DNA of 63,647 nucleotides, counting the filler, from Intoshia linei (lineage: Eukaryota > Animalia > Orthonectida), in assembly GCA_001642005.1 (NCBI GenBank). It is 6 parts of 6 records of this genome, joined end to end, with 100 filler letters (N's around TTAATTAATTAA, not from the genome) between each part and the next. Parts side by side here need not be neighbours in the genome. Positions count along the whole stretch, not along the records: positions 52,252 to 58,806 come from LWCA01001659.1; 5 more parts are not named here. The stretch is one strand, 5' to 3'. Positions 3,853 to 59,075 of the stretch are shown one piece after another. Both the position numbers and the translations under genes were made by a program. Under the pieces are notes generated by a model, which worked only from the letters and a program-made list of their open reading frames with translations, ran no database searches and was not told the DNA's origin. Position 1 is the first letter of the stretch, and the number at the start of each line of letters is the position of its first letter.

Positions 3853-5386
3853 ATGAGTTTGTTTAGGTTTTGTATATTTTTTTTATTCACAATGGACGTA
3901 TCTACATCTAATGAAAAATTAATCAAGGAATACATTCTTAGGAATTATGATTCTTCGATAAGACCAGTCAAGAATATATCACAAACAATGGACATTAAAG
4001 TTGCTATGTCTCTTTATCATATTTTGGACACTGTAAGATTTCTGATTACCGTTAATAAATGATTTAGAATGAAAAGGAACAAACTTACACAACCTTACTG
4101 GCGATTCGAATGGTAAAATTATATTAAAAAATACTTCGATTTTCGTTTTAGAAATGGTTTGATGAATATTTTGTTTGGAACAATACAGAATATAAAAACA
4201 TCAAAGAAATCAATATACCCCAAAAATTTGCTTGGAAACCCGATATAGTTGTATCAAATTTGTAATTATGTTACTGTATTATTTTAATTATATTTACAGT
4301 GCGGGTGGCAATTTTGGTCAAAGTTATGAAACCACTTTAATAATAAATTCTAATGGGTGGGTTTTATGGATGTACCCAATCAAAGTTAAAACATACTGCA
4401 CCTATGATGTTTACCGCTTTCCTTTTGATTTACAAAGTTGCAATATAACACTGATATCTTGGACTCACAACGGCTATCAACTTAACTTGTCGTATTCCGA
4501 AGAATTTCCAAACAGCAGTAATGTAGATTAAATTGTATATATCTTTTAGTATACTATCGAAATGAGTACAATGAATGGGCCGTAACATCAATAAAAACAA
4601 CCAGAAACGTTTTGTATTACGCATGTTGCAAGGAACCTTATCCAGATGTAACCTTTACAATAGAAATGAAACGTGGCTCCATGTTTTATATATTTTATTT
4701 CATTATGCCTTGTTTATTATTTTATTTCATTACAATATTTGGATTTTTTGTTCCAGCAAACTCAGGAGAAAAAATAACTATTGAAATAACTGTATTCTTG
4801 TCAATAGTGATATTATTATTGATGGTATCGGAAGAAATGCCTCCAGTATCGGAGTATATACCTGTTTTAGGTAATATATTATTAATATGTATAATTTACA
4901 TTGTATATAGGTATGCTTTTTGGAGCTACTATGGCATTATCGGCCCTGGCCGTATTTATGAGTGTAGTAACCTCAATGTTGTACGGCTTACATGTTAGCA
5001 CCTATGAACCACCAATTTGGCTATATGATTATTCAATAATTGTTTATCTAATATGGAACTCGTGGTATTCTCGTAGAAAATTGAAGGATTTAAAAGCTTC
5101 CTTTAAATTTAAAGAAAACAGAATTGATGGTGATTCTACAATTACTAGATTAAATAGTTGCATATCAGATAGACTTACAACTCAAAGAAAAGTATCAGAA
5201 CATATTCATGAAGAAACGAAAGATAATTTATCGGAAAGATTTTATGATCGCACAATATTTCATTCATTTACTTTATCCCGAAAGTGGATTTTAATAAGTT
5301 CTTCTGTTAATTGGACATTGTTTTGTATTTTTGTTGTATTTAGTGTACTTGTATACGTTATTATCACGTCTTTGTGGTTTATTTAG
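3853..5386 (+). CDS. Nicotinic acetylcholine receptor alpha-type subunit (Cys-loop cation channel), 6 exons
   Basis: Signal peptide, YDSSIRPV, WKPDIV, Cys-loop CTYDVYRFPFDLQSC, loop B SWTH, vicinal cysteines YACCKEPYPD, M1, GEK before M2, M3 and M4. Confidence 0.95.
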
Positions 5387-5997: not shown

Positions 5998-6698
5998 TTA
6001 AACTTGTTGGCCTTTTTGAACTGGTAGGTAGAGTTTAAATTCTGGAGGCAGTTCCTCTTCGGAATATAAACGATCAGAAAAGTAAACTCTACGTATTCTG
6101 CAATTTGCATGGATCTAAAATACAATAAACATGTACAAAAAAGTAAAAATTTACAAATCTAAATAGACATAACGTTTACAATAAAACAACTTCTTACCTG
6201 CACTTTTAACGTTTCGATATAGTTGGTTCCATAAGCACGTCGCGTAAAGTCCGAAAGATTAAATTGGATTTGGTTCCAACCATCATCAAGTCTCATGGGC
6301 ATAGTGCAAATGAAAGGTTTAACTCGTGTTGTGCTTTGATAATTACTAGCTCGAAATCTTCTGCGTACGTTTTTATCATCAACTACTTGCACTTCAAAAG
6401 TAAAATACTTTTTCATGTTTTTGATAATCATTACCAAAAATGGTAATTTGATGCCGAGTGTTTTTTTTGGGTCGTTAGGGCAAGTTATGTATGTGGTACT
6501 AACGTTGGATCCCACAATCTCCAAAACCAGAGACTGTATATCGTTGTCAGTTATGCGTTTTATGTGACCATTTCGAACCTGCATTAAATTGTAAAATTTT
6601 CTTAAATTTAAAACCTTTTTTTCCCATATTTGCAGTGGCTTGTTTCCTATACTGTACAAAATCGACAAGAATCCCGACTGAAATGTGTTTTTAAACAT
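5998..6698 (-). CDS. CFAP20: Cilia- and flagella-associated protein 20 (BUG22), 3 exons
   Basis: [18 protein letters not shown]...[11 protein letters not shown]...[22 protein letters not shown]; last exon [33 protein letters not shown]. 36-nt intron at 6579-6614. Confidence 0.98.
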
Positions 6699-7004
6699 TA
6701 ACGGAGTAGAATCAAATAAATCAGACCCTAAAACAATTTTTGTTGTCCAAATTGAATTTAAATTGGGGATTTAAGTAACAGTGTTTACTATAAACAAACT
6801 CTATGGAAATTTCAATTATTTCTATTTATTTTCATGTTGTCAACCTATACCTATTAGAAACGGCTAACATACGAAACGTCTAGCTTTTAAACAAAGCGAT
6901 AAATTACAATGTTCCGTTTGGAATTTAAGATTACGCAAAAAGGCATTAAAATTTTAATTTGATACAACAGTAGTAAATTGCATATGCATGTGTAACCTTT
7001 TTAA

Positions 7005-9897
7005 TCATGTGACAGTTTCTTTGTCTTTGTCAGAAGTCAACTCTAGGTATAAATTATTTCGTCAAAAATTACATACCTTTTATAAAATCAGACATGGAGG
7101 GAGGCATCATATTTAGGATGTTTTTAATGTCTTCATCTTTACTATCTAGTTCAAAATCCATGCCTTTTGCCAAACCCATTTGTCGCAATATTTCTACATC
7201 ATCGTGCACTTGGAAGTTTTGGTTGAATTTGAAAATATATTCTGTTCTGTAAAATAGATGTAAATGAAGTATATAACCTAAAATGTTACTTGTCGTTAGA
7301 AATACTACAGTCGATTATTGTAGACTTTTCTGTGCTAAGGCATATAAATGGCAATTTTACTGTTGTGCTTTGAAGTGGTGGCCCATTTTTAGATTCTTCA
7401 TCAGCATTCCGTTTAATTAAATTTTTTAATGCAACATGCTAAATAAATTTATAAATTACAATTTTAATTTAATTTTAAATGCGGCTTAAGTGATAAACAT
7501 TTTCAATAATATCGGGTGGATAGACCAGGGACGAATGGAAATTGTACGTCCATACATATTTTTTTTTTAAAAATTGAAAATCTATACATTGCTTAATGGG
7601 TCGTTCATTATCTAAAAATTAAAAATAATCGTTGGAAATCGCATTGCTTATCGATTATTTTTTATTTATTATTTTCCAACATTACCTATTAACACTATGC
7701 GTGTGGTAACATTTGAAATTTGTTAGCATTTCTATATTTTCCAACTACTACATATGAAGTATATAGCACGCAGTGTTAATAAATTAAAAAGTAGGCTCAT
7801 CGTGATTGTAGGTCCGGTCCATATGACCCTATCCACTCTCCAGGGTCCTGGTAAGGTACAATACGGTAAATTGATAATTTAAGAGTTTTAACATTTTTTT
7901 AGAATATAGGTTTTGAAAATGTATATTAAAATACACATAATTAAAATTTTTTATGTAGAGAACCTTCCAATATAATCCTATACAAAATTTAGTTAAAATA
8001 ATTCCATAAACACCTTCAAAAATTTGAAGTTAAATCTAATACTATACAAGTGGTTATAAATCAAGAATTAAAGAGAAAAATTTTATTTATAAATAAAGTA
8101 ATTTATTCTCACTTAGCTGTAATATGAGTTACTATTTCGGGTAGACACTATGCGACTTTTGTAAAACAAAAAAAAAGTACATTAGTGTTAAAATTAAAAG
8201 GGTGTGCTTTATTTCCACTACCTTATTACATAACTTTTGCCTTTCATTGTCATACATATCAAAATGTTTTAAGTAACTACACCACGTTTATTATTTCTAA
8301 TTAACCACTATTCCAAAAAATATTTTATGTGGTATTTATTGACTGCAGGACAATATTCCCCTATTTTCAATACTATCTGAAAAATAATTATGAAATATAT
8401 ATATGTAAATATTATTTTATAGGTTTGCTGGTAATCATATTTATAAAAATGTACTTGTATAATGAGTTCTCGTAACTTGCTTCGTCTACTAAGAATTCTT
8501 TCATATCTAACTCTACATTCATTTTCTAGGCTAGCACACTCCTGTAAAGATGTAGTTGGAAGTCCGACCCATTTGATTTCTTTTTTTTCCTAAAATCGAT
8601 TAAAAATATTATATAATAAATAAATATTACTTTGGTTATAATATTCATAGCCATAAGAACATTTAATGCATCGTACACCCGTCTACGAATATTTTTATAT
8701 TCGCATCCAGGATCCGGGCTAAACCCAGCAAATTCATTCAGTTCAGAAATTAATTCATCTGCAACTTCGTTGTATGTAGTTGTGCCTTTTTGTTGGACCT
8801 TTTCGCATACTTTTCTAGAGAAATGTCTTAAACCTTTACAAATCTTTTCGGACCCATGAAATTTTTTCCTAAAAAAGATAAATTAAATTTTTTACAAATT
8901 ACGAATCGTTGGTCTTTAGTTTAGGACACGATAAATGTCCATTTGACAAATATTTTTTCATAATAGTTGGTTTTTGACTGTTATGTGTAATTTTTGGTTC
9001 ATCAAAACTTAATTTTGTTTTTTTAAATGGTGCATGGGAAGCAATATTTCCCATTGATATTCCAGGATAAGTTTGTGGTGAGGAATTGCTGAAAACTTTT
9101 ATATTTTTCATCTTTACATTGTTCGTTATATCTGTGTTAATATTATAATTATTTGTACGAAATTCTTTGATTATGGGGGTAGTTATAGGTATTATGCCAT
9201 TATTTATAGTATTCATATGTTTGGTAATAATTTGTATTTTATGGTTTGAATTCGAAAATCCATCATTGCGTATACTTTCATTCTGCATAGTATTTAGACT
9301 GGTTGAAACTTGACAATTTTGATAAGGCTGTTAAAATTAAAATTCATTATACAGTAAAACCTCACTTAACGAACTCCCACATCAACGAACAAATTAAAAT
9401 ATATAAAACTAAATAGAAAAATGGCCAAAAATTAATTTCATAAATGTAAATTAGACTCTCGCTTAACGAACAAAAACTTAGAATGAATTGGTTCGTTAAA
9501 GTGAGGTATTACTGTATATAAAAATTAAAATTACTATAGATTGAACATTATTAGATCTTCCAATTGTGATTACCTTGATGGGACCTTAATAATTTAATGG
9601 ATATTTTTATTTAATTTAAAAACCTTTCATACTCTGTTTAGTAACAATTTTTGTCATGAGCTTGTTACCTATTTCCTGTATATTTGCTCCTTTCGTTTTA
9701 TTCTATAACAATATAGAAAATTTAAAAATATATAACTTCTATCGACGGTTTGATAGGTTTATCTTCCGTAGTTATTGCATTATCCTCTTTTAAATGAATT
9801 ATTCTTTGAATCGGTTTTATTTCATTTAAATCTAAATTTCGAAATGTTTCAAATTCAAATTAATTTAGTTTATAATACCATTTTCTATACTACTCAT
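7005..9897 (-). CDS. TFDP1: E2F dimerization partner (DP) transcription factor, multi-exon
   Basis: [29 protein letters not shown]...[33 protein letters not shown] (DEF box) and DP domain [10 protein letters not shown]...LPFI...[16 protein letters not shown]. Start codon is approximate. Confidence 0.93.
9352..9514. mobile_element. Tc1/mariner (pogo/Tigger-like) MITE in a TFDP intron
   Basis: TIRs cagtaaaacctcacttaacgaac / gttcgttaaagtgaggtattactg flanked by TA on both sides. A related end occurs at ~27720-27743. Confidence 0.8.
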
Positions 9898-10934
9898 TGA
9901 GTAAAATGTAATTCACAGTAAAATTAAAATATATGTTTAAATTCACTAAATTCTCATTAAATTAGTGATACGTATATTTCATTTATTTTAAACTCGTTGC
10001 AAAACAAAAACGCGCGTAGCTTCCCGATAAGATATAAATAAAGTTATTTGTTTACGTTGCTATTTTTCTAATGATACAATTATTTTTTTATGAATTTAGC
10101 CTAAATTTAACATTTTTATTAGAATTTTTATCATTAATATTTTTAGAGATATTTGATTAATTAACATTTTATTTATATCTATGAAACACGCAGAACCGAA
10201 CTTACCATGGTCGAAGCCCCACGTAAATTAAATTTTAAGGTTTTTGTAGACAAAAATATTAAATTGATAAGTTACAACAACGTATTTGACGGCCGACATT
10301 CCCTTTACTTAAATTAAAAAATGGTGCACTAAAGAATATCTTTTAGTAGATATCGGTTATTGTCTTTTTTCACCGAATTTATTAACCCTTGATTTCATGA
10401 ATGTAAGAGTGTCAATCGTACGTTGTTATAGAAAAAATTGCATAAAATCAATTTTTTAAGTAAATAGAAAATTTCCCAATTATATGGCATAATGCAATGT
10501 AAGAAAAAAATTCAGGCCCTTTTTTGATATTAGGTGCCTCCAGCATGGTAGATTATGTTTGGACTACCATTTCTGTGCGCATCATCGGTAATAATTTTAT
10601 GTCTCACTATTTTTCGGCAGACAGTTTACTTACATATAATGTTAAATACTCTGTATAAATGGCATCTTTTACACAAAAAAGAAATTGTCGACTTTAATCT
10701 GACGAAATTGTAGTTTCATACATAAAATATACGATATACTTTGTGATTTTTGAATAATTGGCTATATACTTATAATAAGGTCACTGGTATGATAATACTA
10801 TGATACGGTCTAATTATTCAACATTATTATTTAAATGTTAAAGAATTGAGTCTATCCATAACATTTACGGTATTATAAAGTATTACGTTACCAAAACAAA
10901 ACTAGTTATTAGTTAATATAAGTCTGACGTTTAA

Positions 10935-12396
10935 ATGAGCGTATTTCTAATAGACAAAAATTTTCAAAAACCCTATAATCGAAAAACAAAAAATAATGTA
11001 TTTGAAATTGATAAAATATTACTCCAATTGGACTTTGGTATGGTGGCAAAGATTATATGTTCCTTTCCGGCTGTCGCTTTAATCACGTGTATGATTTTAA
11101 GTATATATTTTAATTCAAAGGAAACCTTCAGTAATGACTGCAGTGGGGTAAGTTTGTGATTTAGACCTTTTTAATATTAAATGTAGTTGGCAAAAAACTT
11201 TATACCAACTATAAGTGGAGCTATAGGCGTTGCACCTCAAAGTTATATTTGGAAAATAGCCATTGCTATGCATTCTGGAGTTAGATTTTTAATTATACCT
11301 CTTGTATATAGACTCCCAAAACATTACACTAATGTAAAAACCAATCCAATAATTATATATATGATAAATATTTCTGTTGTATGCTACTTTATCGAAAACT
11401 TTACCTTGGTTTGTGTCAGTATTATTGGAAATAAAGACAATTTTTGTAACATCATTATGTTAAAAATTATCATTACTAAATATATAATAATTAATTAAAT
11501 AAGATTATCATTTTTTTAGACTTGCACGAAAAACTGTTTATTACATTTATTGTCAATTCTTTATTTTATCAATTATTAACCATTATTATTTATAAGAATA
11601 TACAAGAAAGACAAAATAAAGTAAGTGTTATATGTTGTAGGTTATTAATATTATTGTTTCATATTTATTAATATGTAGTGGTTCCAAAATGTGTTAGGAT
11701 GATCAATATAATAGATCCATTTATAATTATAGATATTTTACAAACTTGTGATGGTAAACACACATTTATGCATAAAAATCACTGAATTACGGTATGCGAC
11801 GATTTGGTGTACTTCATTTTTTTCTATCGACGCATAATGTAGCCACTGATGTATACTCTGTTAAATTTTTTTTAATTTAGAGTTTTCCATCGTATTCTCT
11901 TAGAATTCAACTTTTTATTGTTAATTTGATTCTTGTTGTATTCATTGCCTTTTTTATGACTATCCATAGAAGATATTGCGCTCATTACGGTATATCAATT
12001 GCATAATAAGTCCCTTAATTAAATTTATTTTATAAAGTTAAAAATGTTTTATTATACAATTTATTGAAAAAAATTTTGTGGATCTGCCATATTTTTATCT
12101 TTTTGTAGTGACCCCTAAAAAAATCCCTGATATATTGTTAGAAAAGCTTTTAAATAAAAAGTTATGAGTCTATTCCTATTTTTCAGACGGTTCCAATCCC
12201 GTCACGATTAAAATTGACATTTTTTTTAACAATCACTTGGTTCTCTATATATTAATTTGAATATTTAGCACTATCTTTTTTTTCTCTCTGTGAATGCTTT
12301 TTATGTTTCAGCATAATTGGATACCATTACCTAATATGCTATGACATTCAGAAATACGATATTATGATTGGACACCCAAAAAGAAAAATTATTTAA
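10935..12396 (+). CDS. PGAP2: Post-GPI attachment to proteins factor 2 (FRAG1/DRAM/Sfk1 family), multi-exon
   Basis: C..NFIPTISGAIGVAPQSYIWKIAIAMHSGVRF, LHEKLFITF, HRRYC, FFSLCE...YH; several TM segments. Confidence 0.85.
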
Positions 12397-17802: not shown

Positions 17803-19878
17803 TTATATGAAAGTGTAATTTACAAAAAAATTTAAAACATTTTCTTCTGGAGGTGGACCCTTTGGGTCATGCAATGCATATATTTTTGTATGTGTTGTAG
17901 TTATTTTTTCGTAATATGCTTTTCGCAATAAATTCTGTTGGTTACTTGTATGTATTACATTTGCCATAGAACCATATTGACTGAGTTCCAGATATGGTAA
18001 TTTCTGCATACTATTGAGAAAGTGAACTTGAATATCATAAAATTTGTTGTCTCGTTTCATGACACTGTTGTTTTTGTTTATATGGCTTGATTTCTGGTAT
18101 AGATTACAATTATTTTTACAATTAATGTTATCATTTTGATCCTCTTCATATTCAAACATTGAATATTGGTATATTGATGTATCTGTAATATTTAGAAACT
18201 TTTTAGATTTCATGATTAACCCATCACTTGTTTGCATATCTTTTTTACCCTTATTTGGTTTTATGAATGCTGGGATTGCATACGGTGGAGCTTGAGTGTT
18301 GGTAGCTATAAGAGGAAATCCATATAAAGTGTTAAGTTTTTCGTCGTATTGATGAGAAAGCCTATTAATTTCAATGGTAAGTTGTGATACCACGTCTTGT
18401 TGTCTCACGGGTGATGTTTTTAATTTGTTTAATAACTTTTGTACAAGATTCCAAAAATCATAGAGCATAGACAATACCGTGCTGTACACCGTAGGGCAAA
18501 TGGAAATGTACCTAAAAAGGCTAAAATTAAATAATAGAAAATTGTACCTTTTTATTAAACTGTATGAAAATGCCACCGGTAGAAAGCACAAAGAAACTGT
18601 GTATCGGGTAAGTCGATATAATTTGTAATTTTCGTAAATATACTTGCTTTGGTTCAATTTTGCGCAAAAATTATTCACACCTAATGTAACGTAAATTATA
18701 TATTATGATGGAATCATTACATTCTTGTAGGTGTAATGGAAGTTTTTGGTTTTTTGTGTCAGTGTTGCACAATTCCCTACAATCTCTGCATAGTCGGCAC
18801 TGTCGAAAGTCAAATATACTGTTTACTTTGTATTCTTGGGCATGTTTGCTACACATGGGTAAAACTAAACATTATTATTTATAACTATAAACAAACCATG
18901 GTCTATGATGTACTTGTAACAGTTGTTGTATCCACTCGTAAGTTGTCGGACCATTTCATTCAAAGATGGAGCTTTCAGTGCACACACTAACCTTTTCAAA
19001 TTACTGAATGATATGTCACTGGTGGTGTTATTGAACAGATTTAAAGACAATAAACTAGCTTTTTCATCGGGACAAATTAAGGCATCTCCCGCTATAGGAG
19101 AAATTGTAATTGTCCGTGTTCCGATAGATGGTAAATTGTTTGTAATTCCCCCATCAATATAATACTAAACGATATAAAACAGATTCTTCTTTTTTTTACT
19201 TGATTTTTGAATTTAGGAATGTCTACTCCACTGAATATTGGAATGAATGAACTACACCCGATAGCCTATTAATTGTAATTAATACTGTTGCATAATTCTT
19301 ACGTCGACTAGTTCTTTTTTATTCTGTAAATTTTGGAGCATTTTATTTTTGAACGGAAACAAAGTTGTTACAGATACAATTATTCTTTTCAAATCACCTT
19401 TAGAAATTTCGTCCGGAATAACTTTTAAGCACGCATCTTTAACTCTTTCAGCTGGTCGGTACGAAATGTGAAAGGAACCAAGAGGGTGCGCATGTGCTGC
19501 ACAAGTATTTTTGAGTAATTCAGTTACACAATCTTCTACATGAAATGTTAAGAATATAAATTATGTATTTACCTATAGATATTTTGGGAAGTAATGCACA
19601 AATGGATGCTGCCATTGCACCAGCCGAAACACCAATACATTTCGCTTTTGTTAAATATGGAGCAATATCATTCATACAAGAAACAACACCCATGTGATAA
19701 ATACCAAGAAACCCACCTATGATAAAGTGTAACAAAATAAATAAATAAAAATACCTCCAGAAAAAGACAAATATGGAAGATTGCTAGCAGTGTAATCTAA
19801 TCTCAAATCGTTACATTCTTGCTCTGATATTGTAGATACTTTATGCCTTTTCCAATTCTCTTCAATTCTCTCTAGCAT
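17803..19878 (-). CDS. Patatin-like phospholipase domain protein (PNPLA2/ATGL/brummer-like lipase); 3' end uncertain
   Basis: LSFSGG/GFLGIYHMGV (oxyanion GxGxxG), GVSAGA (catalytic Ser), SSFIP, YIDGGITNNLP (catalytic Asp), TITISP..G...ICP. Confidence 0.9.
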
Positions 19879-40787: not shown

Positions 40788-43700
40788 ATGAAACGCCTGT
40801 TAATTGCCAATCGGGGAGAAATTGCGTGCAGAATTATTAGGTTTAATTTACATTATTGATATGATTGAATTCAATATTTAATTTTATTTCTCCAATTTAT
40901 CGTCTTTAACCATATAATCTATGTTTTCTTAATCAAACAGCAAATTTAACATTTATTTAAACTCTGATTGAAAAATTGATTCAAATTTTAATTATTTAAT
41001 TTATTTGAAACAAAACTCAACACTAAAACAAACCTCCAATTTACTTCAAAACGGTCCGAAAATCGATTTTAGGATCATGTTAAAAAAATTTTTAAAGTTC
41101 TTGCTTCAGACCCAGTTTCCAGAGGCGAACTTACCAATCTCGTGGCCACCTTAAAATAAAAAAATAGTAAACGATTTGTATTATATAGCTTATGTCATAG
41201 TCATCATTGATGACTAGGGCAAACTTTTTCTAACCTATAAAATCGTCAAAATATAACCTATCAAAATAAAATTCTAACTTTTTTAACCTATAAAAAATAC
41301 ATTAGACATTTAATTTGGGCCCTCCTGTTAAAAATATTTTTTAACGTTACTAGATAAAAAATTTTTTTGTTTTGTGAGTAATTTCTTCAGCATGCTAAAA
41401 CTTATTTCTACATGTTCTTCCTTCTTGTCATGTCACCTTCCTAATGTATATTATGTCAAGAAAATATGAAATCAGACACAGACACGAAAACGGCTTAGCT
41501 ACCCCTATGGGAGAATAATAATAATAACAATATTTAATATTATTATTCATGCTAATTACAGGTTAAGGGAACCCATTATTAAAGGACATGTCATTTTAGT
41601 TATGTAAAAAAATTCCGATAACCAGGAATTAGCATGTACAATATTATTTTATCTTTTTTATTATAATAATTGAAATTAATAATATTAAAAATTTCAGAGA
41701 AATCATACTTATAATCACGTACAACATGTAAGGTTTTGCTTTTGTTGTCTTGATTTTTTTAAATTTTTTTATTTCTTTAATTTTTTCTTCAATATAAATG
41801 CAAGAAAAATTAACAGATTTTACCAATTGATTCAATACATTTGAAAAACAGTATGTATCATAAAATGTTTGATTATAAATAGGATAATATCCCATAATAT
41901 CTACGCTTTGGATTTTCTTGTCGAAATACACATTTCTAATTGTAGTGTAATAATCATTTTCACATAATTGTGTTTTTTTATTTTTAGTGTAACCAATTTT
42001 ACATGAAAAATATTTTGATAATCATTGAAAATTAAAATCCAGTTTTGGTTTTATTTCACTGACAGTGGTCATACATAATTGATTTGAATTTTTATTAATA
42101 TACATTATTAACCCATTTGCATTTCTACTGTAATTCTTTATAGTTAATGCTCAATTTGGTACATGTTTTAGAGTCAATTTAACACCTTGATACACATTTG
42201 TAAGATAAATTTTCACTTGTTTGTTTCTGGTATCGGAAAATATGTTATTTATTTGATAATAGTCCAATCTAAAATTTGGTATATTAGTGACAAACATTTC
42301 AGCCCAATATTTGCCCCCATTTAAAGAAATGAAGTAATTTACATCATTAATAGCAATAAACACATTTACAGACCTTTTATCGAAATTTTTATCTTAACTA
42401 TAATTATAATACGATTTTGTCCAATGTTTACCACCAAAACTAAGTAAATACATAAACTTTTCAATGCTAACTTGTTGGTTAGTGTCATGCTTAACCCTAA
42501 TTCATGGTAATTTTGTGAATATTTTACATACACGTCTTTTTTTCAATTTGTAATTTATTAAATGATTCGGTATTATTGTAAGACACAAAACTTTGATGTG
42601 ATTTGAAACTGATTATCAGATACATGAATATTCAAAAATACCATATGAAAGTGTATAGTCCGTTTCATCTTTGGGTAGATTTGATAGATTCATCTTTTTA
42701 TAATTTGAAAAATTGTCATCTCTTTATGTAAAATACTAATTTATTACATTTAAGTAAAAAAACCATTTTAAAATATCCGAAATTTCTTTATCACAGTATT
42801 AAATATTTACATCAATTTTATTAAAAAATATTAAAATTTACTCTTATTTCTAGAAATATTCGTTTTCTCAATTCCATTACACTTATTCGATAATCTAAAT
42901 AATTTAAATTATAATTACTATCGTATGTTAGCATTCGAGTTTCTTTATTTGGTTGGTTAATATAATATTTATTGTTGTAATCAAATATAAGAGCATTTTT
43001 AATTATATTAGAATATTTGATTCCACTTATATCTCCGACTTTCATGATATAATTTGATTCGCTGTCAAATTTAATTGGGTGTTTTAATTTATTCATGTTT
43101 TTTTAAAATCTAGAGTGTATTGTGTTTCATCATTTTGTTTTATAAACCTTTCCTTTTGAGTTTTTAAATAATATACCCTTGATTTATCAGTACAAAATAG
43201 AAATTTTTTTTTATTGAAGCAGTTTTTATTTTCAAATTTTATTTCCAGTTTAATTACTTCGAGTTGGCCACTCAATGTCAATAGTAAATTATTAATGACA
43301 GGATAGTTTTTCTTAGTTTAATAGAAATAATTGAAATTGGTTTAATTGCATTGATAATGAATAATTTTATGTCATCAAATTTGTGTTTACATATTGTTTC
43401 AAAGAATTTTTCATTAAATGTATTTTTTTGTACTAAAACGATGCCTTCTTCTGTGTCCATAATTATTCTACCGTAGGCTATACTGTATATCGTTTTATTG
43501 TGCAGTTTTAATCCTACATCTTGGAAATCAAATTCAACACCATATATTACTGCCAATTTTAGAGTTATAACTAGTATAATATATTGGGATAGTTTTAGCA
43601 TTTTTTCGTAAATGGATATCATGATTATAATGTAAATATTGTAAATTCGTATTTCATTTCTAGAATGTAGTAAGGGAAATTTTATTTAATAACTATTAAA

Positions 43701-52075: not shown

Positions 52076-52258
52076 TTATGTTACATTTTTGTAAAATTAC
52101 ATTTTTATTTTACTATACAGTGCCGGTCAAAAGTCTTGGACTCTCCCCATANNNNNNNNNNNNNNNNNNNNNNNNNNNNNNNNNNNNNNNNNNNNTTAAT
52201 TAATTAANNNNNNNNNNNNNNNNNNNNNNNNNNNNNNNNNNNNNNNNNNNNATTAAAA

Positions 52259-52960
52259 GTGAAACAAAGGCATGGCATATTATTGTCTATCACGACCGTA
52301 AATAAATGTTTTAAAAACTTTCACTATACATTTAAAAGGATTGTAGGAATAAAACAAAACATTAAGGTGGAATCTGTTCAAGAAGAACAACAGCGTTTTA
52401 AGAAATGTTATCAAAATATTGTTTTAGAGAAAGGCGCAGAAAAAGTTTTTTATATCGATCAGATTGGATTCAATGTATGCTTGCGATCAAAATCATTTAC
52501 TGGAGAATTAGCTAACAGTACCTTAGTTAGACTTACTTCTGGAGTTCGATTCAAAAATCGAATATTTTGTCTTGCTATAAATAAGACGGGTCACATTTAT
52601 TACAAGTTTCAGTCTATCGTTTATAACGCAGATACTTTTTACAATTTTATGGAAAGTTTTATCGAGTGGATTGCTGAAAAAAAATTAACAGATTGCATGT
52701 TTATTTTGAACAATGTTCAATTTCAACATAATTCCAATATAGTCCAACTTGTTAAAGATAACGGACATAGCATGGAATGTGTACCTTTTAGTGCTGACTT
52801 TAGCCCCGTTGAGATTCTTTTCAATAATTGGCAGACTAATATTAGAATGGCGAAACCGAATAATTTTGATGAATTGGATAAATTAATGATTCACGAGTTA
52901 AATTCAATAACTTGCGAAAATTGTGATACTTTTTTCTCCAATGTTTTTACACGTGTGTAA
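52259..52960 (+). CDS. IS630/Tc1-family (DDE_3-like) transposase-derived ORF, 5' end in a gap, catalytic motif degenerate
   Basis: HTH-like SITTVNKCFKNFHYTFKR, VFYIDQIGFN, FILNNVQFQH, VPFSADFSPVEILFNNW; 233 uninterrupted codons. Confidence 0.8.
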   Translation: MKQRHGILLSITTVNKCFKNFHYTFKRIVGIKQNIKVESVQEEQQRFKKCYQNIVLEKGAEKVFYIDQIGFNVCLRSKSFTGELANSTLVRLTSGVRFKNRIFCLAINKTGHIYYKFQSIVYNADTFYNFMESFIEWIAEKKLTDCMFILNNVQFQHNSNIVQLVKDNGHSMECVPFSADFSPVEILFNNWQTNIRMAKPNNFDELDKLMIHELNSITCENCDTFFSNVFTRV

Positions 52961-53090
52961 TTTACTTTATCTATTAAATATATGACTATTATTTACTTAT
53001 TTTTAATTCGCAAGTTATATAAATACCCATTTAACGGTGAAACGTATTACTGAATTATATGAAAAACGTGTATATATAGAGATCATAAAA

Positions 53091-53782
53091 TCCTTTACTT
53101 AAATAAAAATGAATGTCTGTGTGTGAAAGGATTGTAATATATATAAAAATGATAATAAAAAAGTTGTATTACTTATGGTAATTCGTTGTTGTAGTTTAAA
53201 TTTTAAAAATCGTTTTAAAATGAGAATTTAAAAATTGCATGGCAATAAAAAAAATTCCGAAAAATGGATTATATAGATTTTCACCCATATTTCTTTATTG
53301 GAAATGTGTAGACGTTCAATGCACACTTTTTTGAAATTGTAAGATCAATATTTACATTTTCATTTTTATTATTATTATTAACCGTTTAATAATTTTCGAA
53401 ATATTTGAAAAATATGTGTTGATATTATATTAAAAATTATTTTTCACCGGCAATGCGTCGATTTCTGAGGTTGAAATTTCGTATTTATATAAACTGAAAT
53501 AAGCTCTATAAGAATAATTTTTTTTTTAATTTTCGGACTGTTGATTATTTCAAATTTTTGCTTTAATAAAATATTTCAGATAAAAAATATATGAATATTA
53601 AACTGCTTTTTTGACCGTGAAGGTGTCACTTATTCAGATTGAAATTTTTTGTGTGTGTTAACAGGATACAACTGTACCTTTCTAGAGCTGTTTTTATTTG
53701 AAAAAAATTTAATTGGTATAATAAAAGAGTGCCTTCGGCAGAGCTAGGTGCTGTTGGTACGTAGTACAAAACTGCCAAGCTA
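53091..53782 (+). mobile_element. Rearranged Helitron-family copy (5' TC end, inverted internal segment, 3' hairpin end)
   Basis: a^tcctttacttaaataa start; 53395-53680 is the reverse complement of 58508-58806; 3' end ggtgctgttggtacgtagtacaaaactgccaagcta. Confidence 0.62.
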
Positions 53783-54469
53783 TTAATATATATAATTTTA
53801 GTGAGGTCTCTCAATACCGCTACTATTTTTTAAATTTGTAACAAACTTATAAGGAAAATTCTCAATACCGCCACATATTTAAAAAAATTTGTCAAATTGT
53901 GTTAAAATTTAACTTAAATTTTATACAAAAATATAGTAGCACTAGTTTACAATAAATTAGTTCGTTCTATATTTTACTTTATCGTTAATTCTACTTCATA
54001 ATTTATTCTATCCTCATTTAGAACAACTAATTTAAAGTTTACATACGATTTGTTATATAGTTAACTTTTTTAAAGCATAATAATGTTTTATAGAAAATGA
54101 GGAACAAAAAGAGATCTAGATTAAATTTCACAGAAAAATTTGAAATAATTCGATTTCTACAAATAAATAAAATTATTTACAATTTTTAGTTGTTTTTATT
54201 CTTAAGATAATTATATATCATTCATAGTATATTAATTTCATTCTATTATATTGTTTTGGTTACTTGAATTATCGTTTTTTCGTTATTTTAATGTATTTAT
54301 TGTTTATTGTTTAATTGTTATAGAAACGATTACGCTACTAGTAATTTTACTATTATATTAAATTTTTACCTACAAAAAAACGGCGCACTATCAAAAGATC
54401 GTAAAAATATACTAATGTTAGAATTTATAATTGAATTGGATAAAAAAATATATACTCTGGTGTAAACAC

Positions 54470-55500
54470 CAGTGGCGACACTGAGGTCAAAACGTTATTC
54501 GTGCTCAACACAGTACCATAAAAACGAAACATAAACTTAATATCACTACAATTAATTAACTTTAAATTAAATTTTATTATCTATAATTATTATTTATACA
54601 TATATTCTAATAAACGTGGTTTAATGGCAAACTCATCAAGAATCCGAGAATGTAGTTCTCCATTAATTTCCATTTCTTTTAACAATTTCTTCTCAATAGA
54701 TATTCTGGCAATACAGGAGAGTCTATCTTGCACCATTGTACAACTCAGATATAATCTAATTCTATTGAGCGTCGAAAAACTTCTTTCATTAGAAAACCGA
54801 AGTTATAGGGATGGTGAGTAATAATTCCATACATTTTATACTCTCTGGTAAGACATTTAATAGATCAGTTCTATATATATTGCAATAATTTCTGAATTGC
54901 GGTACATTTCTTAAAATCTTCATTTGCTAGTTAAAGATGATATATCAAAAATATCATGATATATTGAGTTCAACGCCGATATATGATGAGCCGGAAATAA
55001 AATAGAAAATTCATTGAATTTGGTGATATCAATTAATTCGAAAAAATTGTATTCTTCCATAAAAGCAAATCTTTCTCTTAAAGTAACTAGTACATTATCT
55101 ACAATTTCGAAAAATTTTGCTTTATAATTGATCTGCCTTCGTAGTAGTGTCACATGATAATCAATGTCATTAGAATTTAAAATATTATTTGTCCGTTCAA
55201 TAATACCTTCGAAATGTTCATTAGTACGTAACGCTTCAACAAATTTTTTGATTTTAGATGATCCAAATTTCATATTTAATTTTTTCATCTGTAATACGTC
55301 AAACAAAATGGCAGCATTAGACAATATATCATCGAAACAATTAAGAAAGAAAATAAAAGTAGAGTCGTTCAATTTTCCCAACAAAGTTTCAGCTATAAAT
55401 AAGGTATCATCATTCCATGATTGAGTATTATTAAGAAAATCTTGGAATACATTTTTTAATACATTTAAGGAATTCTTTATATATGATACTGTTCGGCATC
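54470..55500 (-). mobile_element. Decayed hAT transposon 3' end (C-terminal dimerisation domain) with TIR
   Basis: NERSFSTLNRIRLYLSCTMVQDRLSCIARISIEK (hAT dimerisation motif), FFEIVDNVLVTLRERF; terminus cagtggcg at 54470. Confidence 0.82.
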
Positions 55501-55835
55501 TTGTTTTTTTTAAAAATATGATTTACTTTTTAAATATAATATTTTAATATTGAAATAATCAAAGCAAAATGATTCTATCATAAAATATTGAAACGACAAT
55601 CACTATGCAGATATTATGTTTCGTTAGTAGATAAAAAATAAAATAGTAGATAAAGACTAGTTTATTTTTATTATCTACTTAGGTTCGTCTCTGGGTAGAC
55701 GGTACTGTAAAATTCTTTACAGACTGACGTCGATTTTGTTACAACTTACTATTTGTAATTTCAAGGGCCCCGATAACTTCTGGTAATCTTTTAAAACTGG
55801 AAAAAGCCATTTTCGAAAAAATGTGCTAAAATTTA

Positions 55836-57848
55836 TTAGTTTACATAAGATACATAATTTTTTCTCCTTTTATACCTTGTGAACAATAATAATAACAATA
55901 ATACAATGGGTATTAATATAAAAGTAATGTATATCCATTTTGATTTTGAATGAGTTCCCATAATGAAAGATTTATGTATTTGTAAATTTACTTTATTTTT
56001 ATTAAAATGTATGTCAAGCTCATGACAAGTCATATTATCCGAAACGAAATTAAACAGATTGGCCATACAGAACGACGAGTAATAATTTGAATCATAAACT
56101 TCTTCATATCCCATTGGGTCCAGTCTAACATTTTTTCCATTCAAACAAACTATACGTTTTCTATTACGATTATTGGGCAAATAGCACAATTTTGTTTTTT
56201 CTTGGATAACATATCCGTGAGCACAAGAGTAATCAGTGTTAAGACATTGACAGGTAATATTACGTTGTGCTACCAGTTGATATTTTGTCAGGTAGCAATA
56301 TTCGTAATCATAAATATTTTTATCTAAATTAACTGAATAAGTATACGTGTATCCATAATCGCAATTAGTGATAGTAGAAATGGAATTTTGTCGACATTTG
56401 TTGATATTCTTTAAGTGTATATGACGAGTAGTTAGATCGATTTTGTTAATTTGACTAATGATTAAATTTCCACTTTTATAATACGCGTAAAATGGTTCTT
56501 CAAAATAAAAATAGTGAATATAATTCGGAGAATAATTTTTCAAAATATTCCAAGAGCGACAACCATCAAACGAGACTACAGCATTGGTAGTAGTATACAT
56601 TAAAACCAGAGCCATATCATTGTTTACCATTATATTATAATGTGCCATTACGCCCTGATACAAGTTATTCACGTGATGAAAATTGTCAAAACTAAAATAT
56701 GCTTTGAAATAGTTCTTGATGGGTATTTGTATCATTGCATAGCTATATAGATAGTAATATTTCAATATACTGTTGTAGGAATTCTGGATATCAGACAATT
56801 TCGACCATTCATCTCCTTGTGAGAAACTTATATAATGTTTAGAATTTTTTCGTATCAGTATCATAGTGTTCATGGTATTGTGACCACTTTTGTCGTCGCT
56901 AAATTTAGATTGACCTAAAAATGTAAAATCACCACTGTGCGTACTCATTAATGGCATATACCTTGTCAAACTTTTATCACTTTTAAACCAATATTTTTTT
57001 TGTGTGCTATATATATACTTTTCTTGGGTGAATATAGATTTCACTAAGGCTAGCTTATCAATTTTTTGTTCTGTTGTGATAAAGCCGATTATTATCCTAC
57101 TTTGGCATATAATTATTTTAGTAATTTTAGTAGATTTGGCGTGAATTAATTTAGAAGTTTCAAAATTATCAAACTTTAATTTAGTCATATCTCCATATTT
57201 ATCGTGTACCAAGTATTCTTGACTAATTTTATCAAAAAAAAAATTTTGCTTTACAAAATTTTCTGGTCTTTTAATTAATTTCAGGTAACTATTTGATAAA
57301 TTGAATAAATAAACTTTACCTTTTGAATATAAAAATAACTGGTTTTTATGATACCAGTCAATTGAAATGTATTTAATATTTGGTAGATAAATTTTTTTGA
57401 CAAAATCATTAACATAATATAAATGTGTTTTACCTGCGCATAATATCGAATTGTTCACATATATCAGAAATAAATGTATGGGTACATAATAATTTACTTT
57501 CTTTACCTTCAAATCTTTGAAAAAATACATAAAATATGTGATATCTCGATTTTTCACTTTGCAATGCAATACTCCAATTGTATAATGATTATAAAATTTA
57601 CTTTGATCAATATAAGTGCGTTTGAATCGGATGGAATTTACATCTGCATAAACTTGCCATATTCTTTGAAATTTAGCATAATTGAATTTATATATACGTA
57701 CATAATGATCTGTCATGAAAATGAAAAAATTGGAAATTCTATGAAAGTTTGGATTTTGGTTTAAATATTTGTTTTCGGTTAAATAGAAATCTAGTTCAGC
57801 CATTTTTATACTTATAATTAAAATCGATACAAAAATTTTGATTAACAT
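55836..57848 (-). CDS. Intronless 670-aa VPS10/sortilin-like type I membrane protein, highly divergent
   Basis: Signal peptide; Asp-box-like YISFSQGDEWS, YFSFDNFHH, VVSFDGCRSWN; 10CC-like CQCLNTDYSCAHGY...C...C..G...GY; TM WIYITFILIPIVLLLLLLF; short tail RYKRRKNYVSYVN. Confidence 0.75.
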   Translation of the reverse strand: MLIKIFVSILIISIKMAELDFYLTENKYLNQNPNFHRISNFFIFMTDHYVRIYKFNYAKFQRIWQVYADVNSIRFKRTYIDQSKFYNHYTIGVLHCKVKNRDITYFMYFFKDLKVKKVNYYVPIHLFLIYVNNSILCAGKTHLYYVNDFVKKIYLPNIKYISIDWYHKNQLFLYSKGKVYLFNLSNSYLKLIKRPENFVKQNFFFDKISQEYLVHDKYGDMTKLKFDNFETSKLIHAKSTKITKIIICQSRIIIGFITTEQKIDKLALVKSIFTQEKYIYSTQKKYWFKSDKSLTRYMPLMSTHSGDFTFLGQSKFSDDKSGHNTMNTMILIRKNSKHYISFSQGDEWSKLSDIQNSYNSILKYYYLYSYAMIQIPIKNYFKAYFSFDNFHHVNNLYQGVMAHYNIMVNNDMALVLMYTTTNAVVSFDGCRSWNILKNYSPNYIHYFYFEEPFYAYYKSGNLIISQINKIDLTTRHIHLKNINKCRQNSISTITNCDYGYTYTYSVNLDKNIYDYEYCYLTKYQLVAQRNITCQCLNTDYSCAHGYVIQEKTKLCYLPNNRNRKRIVCLNGKNVRLDPMGYEEVYDSNYYSSFCMANLFNFVSDNMTCHELDIHFNKNKVNLQIHKSFIMGTHSKSKWIYITFILIPIVLLLLLLFTRYKRRKNYVSYVN

Positions 57849-58082
57849 TTGAAATATTTATAATAGTTGATAGAATTAATCAATCTTTTATTTATTTTGT
57901 AATAAATAATATTCAGTAAATATTGACATTACTGAAATATCATCTATAGTTCTTGAAATGTTTCAAATATAGTTTTATCTCTATACCTCGCCTTTCTTGG
58001 GCTTGGAATAAGTTGGTGAGATAGGGAATTTAAAACTATAAAAACAACAGATAGAACCTTTAAATTAGAGACTAAATTACAA

Positions 58083-59075
58083 TCCTTACTTATATAATAT
58101 GTTACGCAATATTTGTTTGTGTGTTATAAAGTCTACATTTCAATTACAGTTTTTTCCGGGACTTATAATAAGATAAATTTCAACCTCCCAAACTCACATT
58201 TTACGAGTCAAAAACCCCAATTGTCCTTTTTTGAAAATCAAACGAATTGGAAAATTTATAAAAATATATATGCTGATACGGATTTTAAAATCATAAACAT
58301 TATCATAAATTTAAATGCTGATGCGGATTTTAAAATCATAAACATTATCATAAATTTAAATTTAAAAAAATACACTGATGCGGATTTTAAAATCATAAAC
58401 ATTATCATAAATTTAAATTTAAAAAAATTATATTTTCAAAGCCAAAACCATAAATTACTCTTTTTTTTATTATGAAAACAGCGCTATGATTTAAAACAAT
58501 TAACAGGTGGTACAGTTGTATCCTGTGAACACACACAAAAAATTTTAATTCGAATAAGTGACGACTTCACGGTCAAAAAAGCATTTAAGTATTCATATAT
58601 TTTTTTTCCGAAATATTTTATGAAAACAAAATGTGAAATAATTAACTGTCTAAAAATTAAAAAAAATTATTATTCTGATAGAGCTTATTCCAGTTGATAT
58701 AAATACAAAATTTCAACCCCAAGAAATCAACCAGTGACTACTAGTGATTTTTGCGGTGAAAAATAATTTTTAATATATTATCAACCAATATTTTTCAAAT
58801 ATTTCGNNNNNNNNNNNNNNNNNNNNNNNNNNNNNNNNNNNNNNNNNNNNTTAATTAATTAANNNNNNNNNNNNNNNNNNNNNNNNNNNNNNNNNNNNNN
58901 NNNNNNCGGTTCCACCTGAAATAAATTTGGGAACTACTCATTTAAAGGATTGATAATAGTGAATAGTAGCATTCTTACATTAGATTTTCAACTTGAATTT
59001 ATTTTTTTGGCAGAATAAAAATGTGCCTCAGCAGAGCTAGATTATATTTGTACGTAGTACATAACAGTAAACTAA
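58083..59075 (+). mobile_element. Helitron-family copy spanning an assembly gap
   Basis: A^TCCTTACTTATATAAT start; three tandem ctgatRcggattttaaaatcataaacattatcataaatttaaat units; 3' hairpin tgtacgtagtaca near 59050-59066. Confidence 0.7.

What the first reader, a model, noticed from the sequence alone, without database searches (positions are those of the whole stretch)
55836..57848. Intronless, highly divergent VPS10/sortilin-like receptor: candidate member of a lineage-specific, fast-evolving surface protein family
Seen: a 670-aa uninterrupted ORF with a signal peptide, three Asp-box-like S-x-(D/Q)-G-x-x-W motifs, a Cys cluster CQCLNTDYSCAHGY, one TM helix and a short Tyr-containing tail. 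Every recognisable host gene in the window has multiple introns; this one has none. A second paralog at 41644-43622 shares only scattered motifs (DYSCAHGY..KTKLC vs [13 protein letters not shown]; PMGYEEVY..YSSFCMANLFN vs [19 protein letters not shown]). Known: an Asp-box beta-propeller plus 10CC module plus TM defines VPS10-domain cargo receptors, normally a small conserved family. Inference: two very dissimilar copies 12 kb apart, one dead, point to an expanded birth-and-death family, possibly diversified uptake or host-interaction receptors in a reduced or parasitic animal.
Basis: partly seen in the sequence, partly recalled or inferred. Interest (0 to 1): 0.8.

Follow-up and report, generated by a model that had tools for sequence, protein, structure and literature searches.

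The report
Divergent sortilin-like receptor family in an orthonectid
This intact, intron-free gene of the tiny parasitic animal Intoshia linei encodes a membrane protein whose outer part is a very diverged copy of the sortilin/VPS10 cargo-binding domain; it belongs to a family of at least a dozen very dissimilar, partly broken copies that I found only in this species.

Summary
The 670-codon ORF at 55836-57848 (-) is real. Shuffled sequence of this 26% GC contig gives ORFs of at most 138 codons. The piece is a whole 6,555-bp contig of Intoshia linei, where the gene is deposited as hypothetical protein A3Q56_07583.

The VPS10 reading holds:
- There are exactly ten Cys in aa 485-608, with sortilin's spacing.
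- Pfam Sortilin_C matches below its cut-off in this protein and 9 of 10 paralogs.
- A family profile hits solved sortilins at E 4e-10.
- A family-only AlphaFold model (pLDDT 57) has sortilin, SorLA and SorCS2 as its best matches (Foldseek E 3e-12; Z 8.3-10.5 over 314-411 residues).
- Blade number is unresolved, and the Asp-boxes are degenerate.

An exhaustive phmmer search of 1.84 billion proteins found nine relatives, all from I. linei. On their contigs I mapped at least 12 copies. Four look intact and the others carry stops, frameshifts or truncations. Identity between copies is 12-53%.

The cytoplasmic tails are 3-17 aa, basic and unconserved, with no sortilin sorting motifs. I therefore read these as binding receptors that do not use the classical adaptor route. 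That function is inferred, not shown.

The deposited gene model looks chimeric. Novelty is moderate.

The parts
55836..57848 (-). Complete intron-free ORF of 670 codons plus the TAA stop. It encodes a VPS10-domain type I membrane protein (deposited, with a different model, as A3Q56_07583).
   Evidence: ORF listing. ORF length versus shuffles. 96% match to P0001.
57789..57848 (-). Signal-peptide-like hydrophobic N-terminus, about aa 1-20. The deposited model omits it and starts at M16.
   Evidence: Hydropathy. An equivalent hydrophobic start is seen in L001A, L002 and L003.
56409..57788 (-). Beta-rich region, aa 21-480: a compact, diverged VPS10-type beta-propeller. Blade number is not resolved.
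   Evidence: AF2 strands. Structure matches to sortilin, SorLA and SorCS2 span model residues 41-609. The language-model search of aa 17-480 alone returns only Sortilin-Vps10 clusters.
56805..56828 (-). Asp-box position A, aa 341-348 (SFSQGDEW; the Asp is replaced by Ser).
   Evidence: This column is canonical in the paralogs. There is a weak sub-hit to the sortilin Asp-boxes.
56670..56693 (-). Asp-box position B, aa 386-393 (SFDNFHHV; degenerate).
   Evidence: Family alignment columns.
56550..56573 (-). Asp-box position C, aa 426-433 (SFDGCRSW; the Gly is replaced by Cys).
   Evidence: Family alignment columns.
56025..56396 (-). 10CC module, aa 485-608, with exactly ten Cys: 485, 496, 518, 533, 535, 542, 555, 568, 594, 608.
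   Evidence: Cys positions. Pfam Sortilin_C at E 6e-4, 20.6 bits. Family profile versus solved sortilin at E 3.8e-10, with seven Cys aligned.
55878..55937 (-). Single transmembrane helix, aa 638-657.
   Evidence: Hydropathy maximum of 2.87. AF2 helix 638-657. A TM follows the 10CC in frame in six paralogs.
55839..55877 (-). Cytoplasmic tail of 13 aa (RYKRRKNYVSYVN). It is basic, with no Y-x-x-hydrophobic and no acidic dileucine motif.
   Evidence: Regex. The tails of the paralogs are 3-17 aa and unconserved.

Best explanation
The ORF is a functional gene of the orthonectid Intoshia linei. It encodes a type I membrane glycoprotein with five parts: a signal peptide, a compact and strongly diverged VPS10 domain (beta-propeller with three degenerate Asp-boxes), a ten-cysteine 10CC module, one TM helix and a 13-aa basic tail.

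It is one member of a multi-copy family that I found only in I. linei: at least 12 copies, with 12-53% identity between them. The family evolves by duplication, rapid divergence and decay. This copy has lost the family's single intron. It probably heads a tandem array with two broken copies.

Inferred mechanism: the propeller and 10CC ectodomain binds protein or peptide ligands, as in sortilin. The tail is too short, and too variable between copies, to carry the adaptor-binding signals of sortilin or Vps10p. The proteins therefore most likely act as binding or uptake receptors at the cell surface or in the secretory pathway, not as classical Golgi-endosome shuttles.

Shown here: gene integrity, domain identity, family size, restriction to I. 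linei among the databases searched, and the decay of some copies. Inferred: localisation, ligand binding and the biological role.
For: Gene integrity:
- The ORF has 670 codons, against at most 138 in shuffles.
- The nearest paralog is only 38-45% identical, with dS saturated. The open frame is therefore old and has been maintained.

10CC module:
- Ten Cys are present, and the spacing of Cys3 to Cys7 is identical to sortilin.
- Sortilin_C is the best Pfam hit in this protein and in 9 of 10 paralogs, always on the same part of the profile.
- The family profile hits only sortilins in the PDB, at E 3.8e-10.
- Cys2 and Cys4 are lost together in four paralog lineages. This fits a 10CC-a disulfide.

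Propeller:
- The AlphaFold model was built from a family-only alignment (pLDDT 57).
- Foldseek's top ~25 hits are all VPS10 ectodomains, at E 3e-12 to 1e-8.
- VIA-align wide gives sortilin Z 9.7 over 390 aa, SorLA 9.2 over 347 aa and SorCS2 6.9 over 381 aa. These are ranks 1, 2 and 4 of 48,161 chains.
- The 15 best chains in the second look are all VPS10 domains.
- The ESM atlas returns only VPS10 clusters, both for the whole protein and for aa 17-480 alone.

Family:
- All nine phmmer hits in 1.84 billion proteins are from I. linei.
- The copies were mapped on loci L001-L010.
- Stops and frameshifts are seen in L001A, L001B, L004 and L005.

Tails: short and unconserved, with no sorting motif in this copy.
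Against: - No Pfam model reaches its gathering score, and Sortilin-Vps10 (PF15902) is not detected at all.
- The structural model is of low confidence (pLDDT 57, TM-scores 0.30-0.35). Blade number and any ligand tunnel cannot be read from it.
- There are no expression data.
- dN/dS against the nearest paralog (0.38-0.57) comes from saturated dS and from a partner that is itself broken.
- I could not test whether I. linei also has an ordinary sortilin.
- A 13-aa tail could still carry an unconventional signal.
Confidence: 0.72

Rival explanations
1. It is simply the orthonectid's ordinary sortilin/Vps10 ortholog, or one of a few. It does standard Golgi-to-lysosome cargo sorting, and its sequence is blurred by the AT-biased, fast-evolving proteome.
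For: - Domain order is the same as in sortilin.
- Orthonectid sequences are known to evolve fast (PMC6543705, abstract).
- The composition is extreme: Y, I, K and N each make up 9-10%.
Against: - There are at least 12 very divergent copies, several of them broken.
- The tail is 13 aa, with no Y-x-x-hydrophobic or acidic dileucine motif.
- Tails differ in every paralog, down to 3 aa in L002.
- No conserved furin-type propeptide site: RFKR at aa 74-77 is not conserved in the paralogs.
Confidence: 0.17
2. The ORF is a non-functional or decaying duplicate in a pseudogene-rich family that happens still to be open.
For: - Neighbouring and related copies carry nonsense mutations and frameshifts.
- The gene sits among transposon remnants and dispersed repeats.
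- There is no expression evidence.
Against: - It has 670 stop-free codons in 26% GC DNA, where chance gives fewer than 140.
- It is at least 55% diverged from every paralog, so the frame has stayed open over a long time.
- All ten Cys, the TM and the signal-like start are retained.
Confidence: 0.07
3. The gene is cargo of a mobile element, or is a virus-derived glycoprotein, and not a host gene family.
For: - It is flanked by inverted copies of a dispersed repeat (window 53397-53678 and 58509-58806, 83% identical).
- It lies next to a Tc1/mariner DDE_3 ORF.
Against: - The repeat occurs several times in every locus examined, regardless of the gene.
- Other copies lie between ordinary host genes.
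- Paralogs carry a spliceosomal intron at a shared position.
- GC content equals that of the host loci.
- No non-Intoshia relative was found.
Confidence: 0.03

Closest known systems
Sortilin (SORT1) and the Vps10p-domain receptors SorLA and SorCS1-3
   Same: - The order of parts is the same: signal peptide, beta-propeller with Asp-boxes, ten-cysteine 10CC module, one TM helix, cytoplasmic tail.
- The Cys spacing in the 10CC matches.
- These are the best structural matches.
   Different: - Only 11-14% identity in the structural alignments.
- The propeller is about 460 aa. I recall about 530 aa for sortilin's; that figure was not checked here.
- The Asp-boxes are degenerate.
- No conserved furin propeptide site.
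- The tail is 13 aa and lacks the YSVL-type and acidic dileucine signals that I recall for sortilin's roughly 50-aa tail.
- Many fast-diverging copies in one genome instead of a small conserved set.
- None of the extra domains of SorLA or SorCS.
Multi-copy Vps10 families of fungi and protists (yeast Vps10/Vth1/Vth2/YNR065C; ciliate and apicomplexan sortilins such as TgSORT)
   Same: - Lineage-specific duplication of VPS10-domain receptors.
- In parasites and ciliates they are used to route cargo to specialised secretory organelles (PMC11731604 abstract).
- Fungal Vps10 clusters are among the nearest language-model neighbours.
   Different: - Those proteins pass the Pfam thresholds.
- From my own knowledge, they have long cytoplasmic tails with sorting signals, and in fungi often two VPS10 domains.
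- None is known as a decaying family with 12-53% identity between copies in an animal.
Bacterial and eukaryotic BNR/Asp-box propellers (sialidase-like)
   Same: Asp-box motifs on a beta-propeller.
   Different: - They have no 10CC module.
- Such propellers score clearly lower than VPS10 domains in the structure searches: TM 0.13-0.24 against 0.30-0.35, and Z at most 7.3 against 8.3-10.5.

Membership tests
VPS10-domain (sortilin) receptors | 10CC module: ten conserved cysteines C-terminal to the propeller (10CC-a plus 10CC-b). | tested here: met
   - Exactly ten Cys lie in aa 485-608.
- Seven of them align with sortilin Cys2 to Cys8, with spacings 15, 2, 7, 13 identical and the next 13 against 14.
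- The family profile hits sortilin at E 3.8e-10.
- The ten columns are conserved across paralogs, with paired loss of Cys2 and Cys4.
VPS10-domain (sortilin) receptors | Ten-bladed beta-propeller. | tested here: inconclusive
   - The family-only AF2 model has sortilin, SorLA and SorCS2 as its best matches over 314-411 residues (Z 8.3-10.5).
- The model's pLDDT is 57 and only 34 strands are resolved before aa 480, so the blade number (9 or 10) cannot be stated.
VPS10-domain (sortilin) receptors | Asp-box (S-x-D-x-G-x-x-W) repeats in the blades. | tested here: met
   - Three family-conserved Asp-box columns exist.
- They are degenerate in this copy and canonical in several paralogs.
- There are weak sub-hits to the sortilin and SorLA Asp-boxes.
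VPS10-domain (sortilin) receptors | Curated Pfam thresholds for Sortilin-Vps10 (PF15902) and Sortilin_C (PF15901). | tested here: not met
   - PF15901 scores 20.6 bits against a cut-off of 27.
- PF15902 is not reported, even at E 10, on aa 16-490.
- Paralogs score 13.5-26.8 bits, all below the cut-off.
VPS10-domain (sortilin) receptors | Type I topology: signal peptide, lumenal VPS10 domain, single TM. | tested here: met
   - Hydropathy peaks only at aa 1-19 and 636-660.
- There are five N-x-S/T sequons in the ectodomain.
- The layout is the same in six paralogs.
- No dedicated signal-peptide predictor was available.
Sortilin-type sorting receptors (functional class) | Cytoplasmic tail with Y-x-x-hydrophobic and acidic-cluster dileucine signals for AP, GGA or retromer. 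| tested here: not met
   - The tail is 13 aa and neither motif is present.
- Paralog tails are 3-17 aa and unconserved.
Sortilin-type sorting receptors (functional class) | N-terminal propeptide removed at a furin site. | tested here: not met
   The only R-x-K/R-R in the ectodomain (RFKR, aa 74-77) lies in a predicted strand and is not conserved in the paralogs.
Sortilin-type sorting receptors (functional class) | Binding of peptide C-termini in the propeller tunnel. | not testable with these tools
   The model is too poor to examine a tunnel. This needs a structure or binding assays.

The most novel reading that the evidence does not exclude
Orthonectids have turned the VPS10 cargo-binding domain into a variable family of minimal-tail surface receptors. 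The copies duplicate in tandem, diverge to near-unrecognisability and decay. They would serve nutrient or ligand capture, or host interaction, by the parasitic plasmodium. That would make them an animal counterpart of the diversifying surface-protein families of protozoan parasites.
Probability: 0.25. Interest if true: 0.65.

Novelty: new variant of a known kind. Interest (0 to 1): 0.45.

Why it matters
VPS10-domain receptors are normally a small, conserved set of sorting receptors. Here a strongly reduced parasitic animal with roughly nine thousand genes (my recollection of the genome paper) keeps at least a dozen copies. They are so diverged that curated profiles miss them. Their tails cannot work like sortilin's, and there are clear signs of gene birth and death.

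If the copies are expressed at the parasite surface, they are candidates for the almost unknown molecular interface between orthonectids and their hosts.

There are two practical points:
- At least four deposited gene models of this family are wrong or suspect, through a missing signal peptide, a missing TM, a removed coding stretch or a chimeric fusion.
- A family profile combined with structure prediction recovers a domain identity that single-sequence tools miss.

Tried and rejected
- Single-sequence phmmer against the PDB found nothing.
- Single-sequence AlphaFold failed, with pLDDT 35.
- The word-based protein search returned only the deposited self protein, both with the ORF and with alignment A1. 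Its words come from the first 500 residues, which here are the poorly conserved part. I left the third search unused because it could not reach canonical sortilins.
- A MAFFT alignment that included N-terminal-only fragments (A2) misplaced them, so I discarded it for A3.
- I looked for an unspliced in-frame intron in the Q-specific insertion at aa 259-284. The only GT..AG candidates there are 12 and 38 nt, too short or not a multiple of three (read).
- I considered TGA or TAG recoding as the reason for stops at conserved Trp codons in two paralogs. I rejected it because the two stops are different codons (TAG and TGA), each one G-to-A change from TGG.
- I considered that the flanking inverted repeats mark a mobile unit. 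I rejected it because the repeat is ubiquitous in all loci.
- Rfam, tRNA and tandem-repeat scans of the piece added nothing relevant.
- Literature searches for Intoshia plus sortilin, and for VPS10 expansions in invertebrates, found nothing.
The pieces were used separately, by reference.
Full report
**What the piece is.** Places 52252-58806 are a complete 6,555-bp contig of the orthonectid Intoshia linei.
- The word-based protein search returns a single protein, hypothetical protein A3Q56_07583, seen on one contig of 6,555 bp.
- GC content is about 26%, the same as in ten other I. linei loci fetched later.

**The observation.** The minus-strand ORF at 55836-57848 has 670 codons.
- In 200 shuffles of the piece the longest ORF averaged 83 codons and never exceeded 138. 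The frame is not a chance product of AT-rich DNA.
- Hydropathy shows only two hydrophobic stretches: aa 1-19 (signal-like) and aa 636-660 (transmembrane, maximum 2.87).
- The 13-aa tail is basic and holds three tyrosines.
- Three Asp-box positions do exist, at aa 341-348, 386-393 and 426-433. They are degenerate here but canonical in paralogs at the same alignment columns.

**The deposited gene model.** The deposited protein (786 aa) starts at M16 and so drops the signal-like segment. It leaves the ORF after codon 619 and continues into a short exon and then the separate ORF at 54920-55384. Four points argue for the uninterrupted ORF instead:
- In six paralogs the 10CC module is followed in the same frame by a TM helix and a short tail.
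- The TM and tail of the nearest paralog resemble those of this ORF.
- An AATAAA overlaps the stop codon (sequence). This is weak evidence in AT-rich DNA.
- The downstream ORF has no family assignment and no similarity to any paralog locus.

I therefore take the deposited model to be chimeric.

**Domain identity by sequence.**
- Pfam reports only Sortilin_C: E 6e-4, 20.6 bits, below the cut-off of 27, at aa 494-584.
- Nothing is reported for aa 16-490 alone, even at E 10.
- The same sub-threshold Sortilin_C hit, on the same part of the profile, recurs in 9 of 10 paralogs.
- A profile of the family alignment A3 hits only sortilins in the PDB, at E 3.8e-10. Seven cysteines align, and there are extra weak sub-hits between the family's Asp-box and two sortilin Asp-boxes.
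- The ORF has exactly ten Cys in aa 485-608. The spacings Cys3-4, 4-5, 5-6 and 6-7 equal sortilin's as printed.
- Across paralogs the ten columns are conserved. Cys2 and Cys4 are lost together in four lineages (L003, L008/L007, L009, L006), with one exception in a decayed copy.
- I recall from the UniProt entry for human sortilin that Cys2 and Cys4 form one of the two 10CC-a disulfides. PMC5700061 confirms three disulfides in 10CC-b, and that a VPS10 domain is a ten-bladed propeller plus 10CC-a and 10CC-b. The exact pairing was not tested here.

**Domain identity by structure.**
- Single-sequence AlphaFold failed, with pLDDT 35.
- With the 16-row family-only alignment A3, which holds no canonical sortilin and so is not circular, the model reached pLDDT 57 and pTM 0.44. 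Blocks between aa 330 and 590 mostly scored 57-82.
- Foldseek against the PDB: the first ~25 entries are all sortilin, SorLA or SorCS2 ectodomains (E 3e-12 to 1e-8, about 670 alignment columns, TM 0.30-0.35). Other propellers have TM 0.13-0.24.
- VIA-align against 48,161 representative chains, independent of Foldseek: sortilin Z 9.7 (390 aligned), SorLA 9.2 (347) and SorCS2 6.9 (381), at ranks 1, 2 and 4.
- The second look at Foldseek's matches: the 15 best chains (Z 8.3-10.5, 314-411 aligned, model residues 41-609) are all VPS10 domains. The best non-VPS10 chain has Z 7.3.
- The aligned lengths far exceed the roughly 120-aa 10CC, so the propeller takes part in the match.
- The protein language-model search gives only VPS10 clusters for the whole protein (0.90) and for aa 17-480 alone (0.85-0.89).
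- Blade number cannot be read from this model.

**The family.** The exhaustive phmmer search of 1.84 billion representative proteins gave nine hits at E up to 0.001, all from I. linei. One of them is named 'VPS10 domain-containing' by UniRef. I fetched their contigs and mapped the copies by tblastn and stop-to-stop translation.
- Intact-looking copies:
 - this ORF;
 - L002, with two exons, 4367-5137 and 6493-7635, where the TM lies beyond the annotated end;
 - L003, with exons 10001 to about 10795 and 10849-12042;
 - the L008 piece 18026-19192, which the deposited model fuses to a carboxylesterase.
- Broken copies:
 - L001A, with a TAG at the Trp of Asp-box C;
 - L001B, with an in-frame TAA;
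 - L004, with many stops upstream of an open 10CC-TM piece;
 - L005, with frameshifts and a TGA at the Trp of Asp-box A.
- Truncated or incomplete copies:
 - L007, a 10CC-only duplicate 95% identical to L008;
 - L006 and L009, with no TM found;
 - L010, which is cut by its contig end.
- Divergence:
 - Pairwise identity averages 34% in the 10CC module (23-53%, apart from the L007/L008 pair).
 - It averages 21% in the C-terminal half of the propeller (12-38%).
 - The N-terminal halves are still significantly similar: z 17 to L001A, and 5.7-6.6 to L003 and L001B.
- Selection: Nei-Gojobori estimates against L001A give dN/dS of 0.38-0.57 with dS above 1. This is saturated and weak evidence.

**Introns.** I. 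linei genes have about five introns per gene, with a median intron length of 57 bp (PMC6543705).
- Family members L002, L003 and L001A share one interruption, at the position of Q aa 250-255.
- In L001A that interruption starts with GT, ends near TTTTAG and holds a repeat fragment.
- This ORF lacks the interruption precisely. 'Intronless' is therefore true, but it is a loss of one intron in a family that is intron-poor anyway.

**Surroundings.**
- At 52259-52960 (+) there is a Tc1/mariner-type DDE_3 ORF, cut by the contig edge (E 6e-8, above the cut-off).
- The first 54 bases of the piece are 100% identical to the reverse complement of the first 54 bases of locus L001 (contig LWCA01001662). 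There the neighbouring gene carries the matching HTH part of such a transposase.
- The two contigs are therefore probably adjacent; I put this at about 60-70%. Contig ends inside a repeat are ambiguous.
- If they are adjacent, this ORF, L001A and L001B form a head-to-tail array on one strand within about 12 kb: one intact copy and two broken ones.
- A dispersed repeat of about 0.7 kb lies at 53126-53795 and 58081-58806. Parts of the two copies are inverted relative to each other (83% identity). The repeat occurs several times in nearly every locus fetched, so it says nothing specific about this gene.
- No Rfam family or tRNA is present in the piece.

**How it most likely works.**
- Shown: an old, maintained ORF encoding a VPS10-type ectodomain on a single-pass membrane anchor. 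It belongs to a multi-copy family, found only in I. linei, that diverges quickly and decays.
- Inferred: the ectodomain binds ligands as VPS10 domains do.
- The 13-aa tail lacks the tyrosine and acidic dileucine signals. Tails in paralogs are 3-17 aa and unrelated to one another.
- Classical adaptor-driven Golgi-endosome shuttling is therefore unlikely for the family as a whole. A role as surface or secretory-pathway binding receptors with diversified specificities is the best guess. I give that functional part about 40%, and the domain and family identity about 85%.

**Rivals.**
- An ordinary fast-evolving sortilin ortholog (0.17).
- A decaying copy that is still open (0.07).
- Cargo of a mobile element (0.03).

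**Comparison and novelty.** The architecture is that of sortilin. Membership in the VPS10-domain superfamily is supported by the 10CC test, the Asp-boxes, the topology and the fold matches. It fails the curated Pfam thresholds and the tail-motif and propeptide features of sortilin-type sorting receptors. No paper in the searchable library links Intoshia with sortilin. I rate it a new variant of a known kind, of moderate interest.

**Limits.**
The pieces were aligned separately by reference.
- The I. linei genome itself could not be searched with a profile. The copy number is therefore a lower bound, and the presence of a conventional sortilin is unknown.

Noticed in passing
window 54920-57803 (-): The deposited model A3Q56_07583 starts at M16, splices out the TM, tail and stop after codon 619, and fuses the gene to an unrelated, unassigned 154-aa ORF at 54920-55384. 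It is probably a chimeric prediction.
   Followed up: partly
window 52252-52960 (+) and L001:1-1212: A Tc1/mariner-type transposase is split over two contigs: the DDE_3 part is here and the HTH part is in L001. The contig ends share 54 identical bases, which suggests the two contigs are neighbours and that three family copies lie in tandem.
   Followed up: partly
window 53126-53795 and 58081-58806: These are two copies of a dispersed repeat of about 0.7 kb. Copies at 70-93% identity occur several times in nearly every I. linei locus fetched. Parts of the two copies here are inverted relative to each other (83% identical).
   Followed up: partly
window 58262-58428: Tandem array with 45- and 57-nt periods (about two copies each, 94-100% matching) inside the dispersed repeat.
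   Followed up: no
L001:3648-3650 and L005:10808-10810: In two different paralogs the inactivating stop replaces the conserved Asp-box tryptophan (TAG and TGA). Each is one G-to-A change from TGG, as expected under AT-biased mutation.
   Followed up: yes
alignment A3, columns of Q Cys496 and Cys533: The second and fourth cysteines of the 10CC module are lost together in four paralog lineages. This is a covariation signal for a disulfide between them.
   Followed up: partly
L003:10343-10627: The deposited model of A3Q56_03469 removes this stretch as an intron. It is open in frame and aligns with aa 128-192 of the window protein at z = 6 over shuffles. The same model also stops before an in-frame TM helix.
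   Followed up: yes
L008:18026-19192 and L007:9956-10462: In L008 a VPS10-like half-gene with its own TM and tail is annotated as the C-terminus of a 1,334-aa carboxylesterase-domain protein (A3Q56_02741), which is probably another chimeric model. L007 holds a 10CC-only partial duplicate that is 95% identical in protein.
   Followed up: partly
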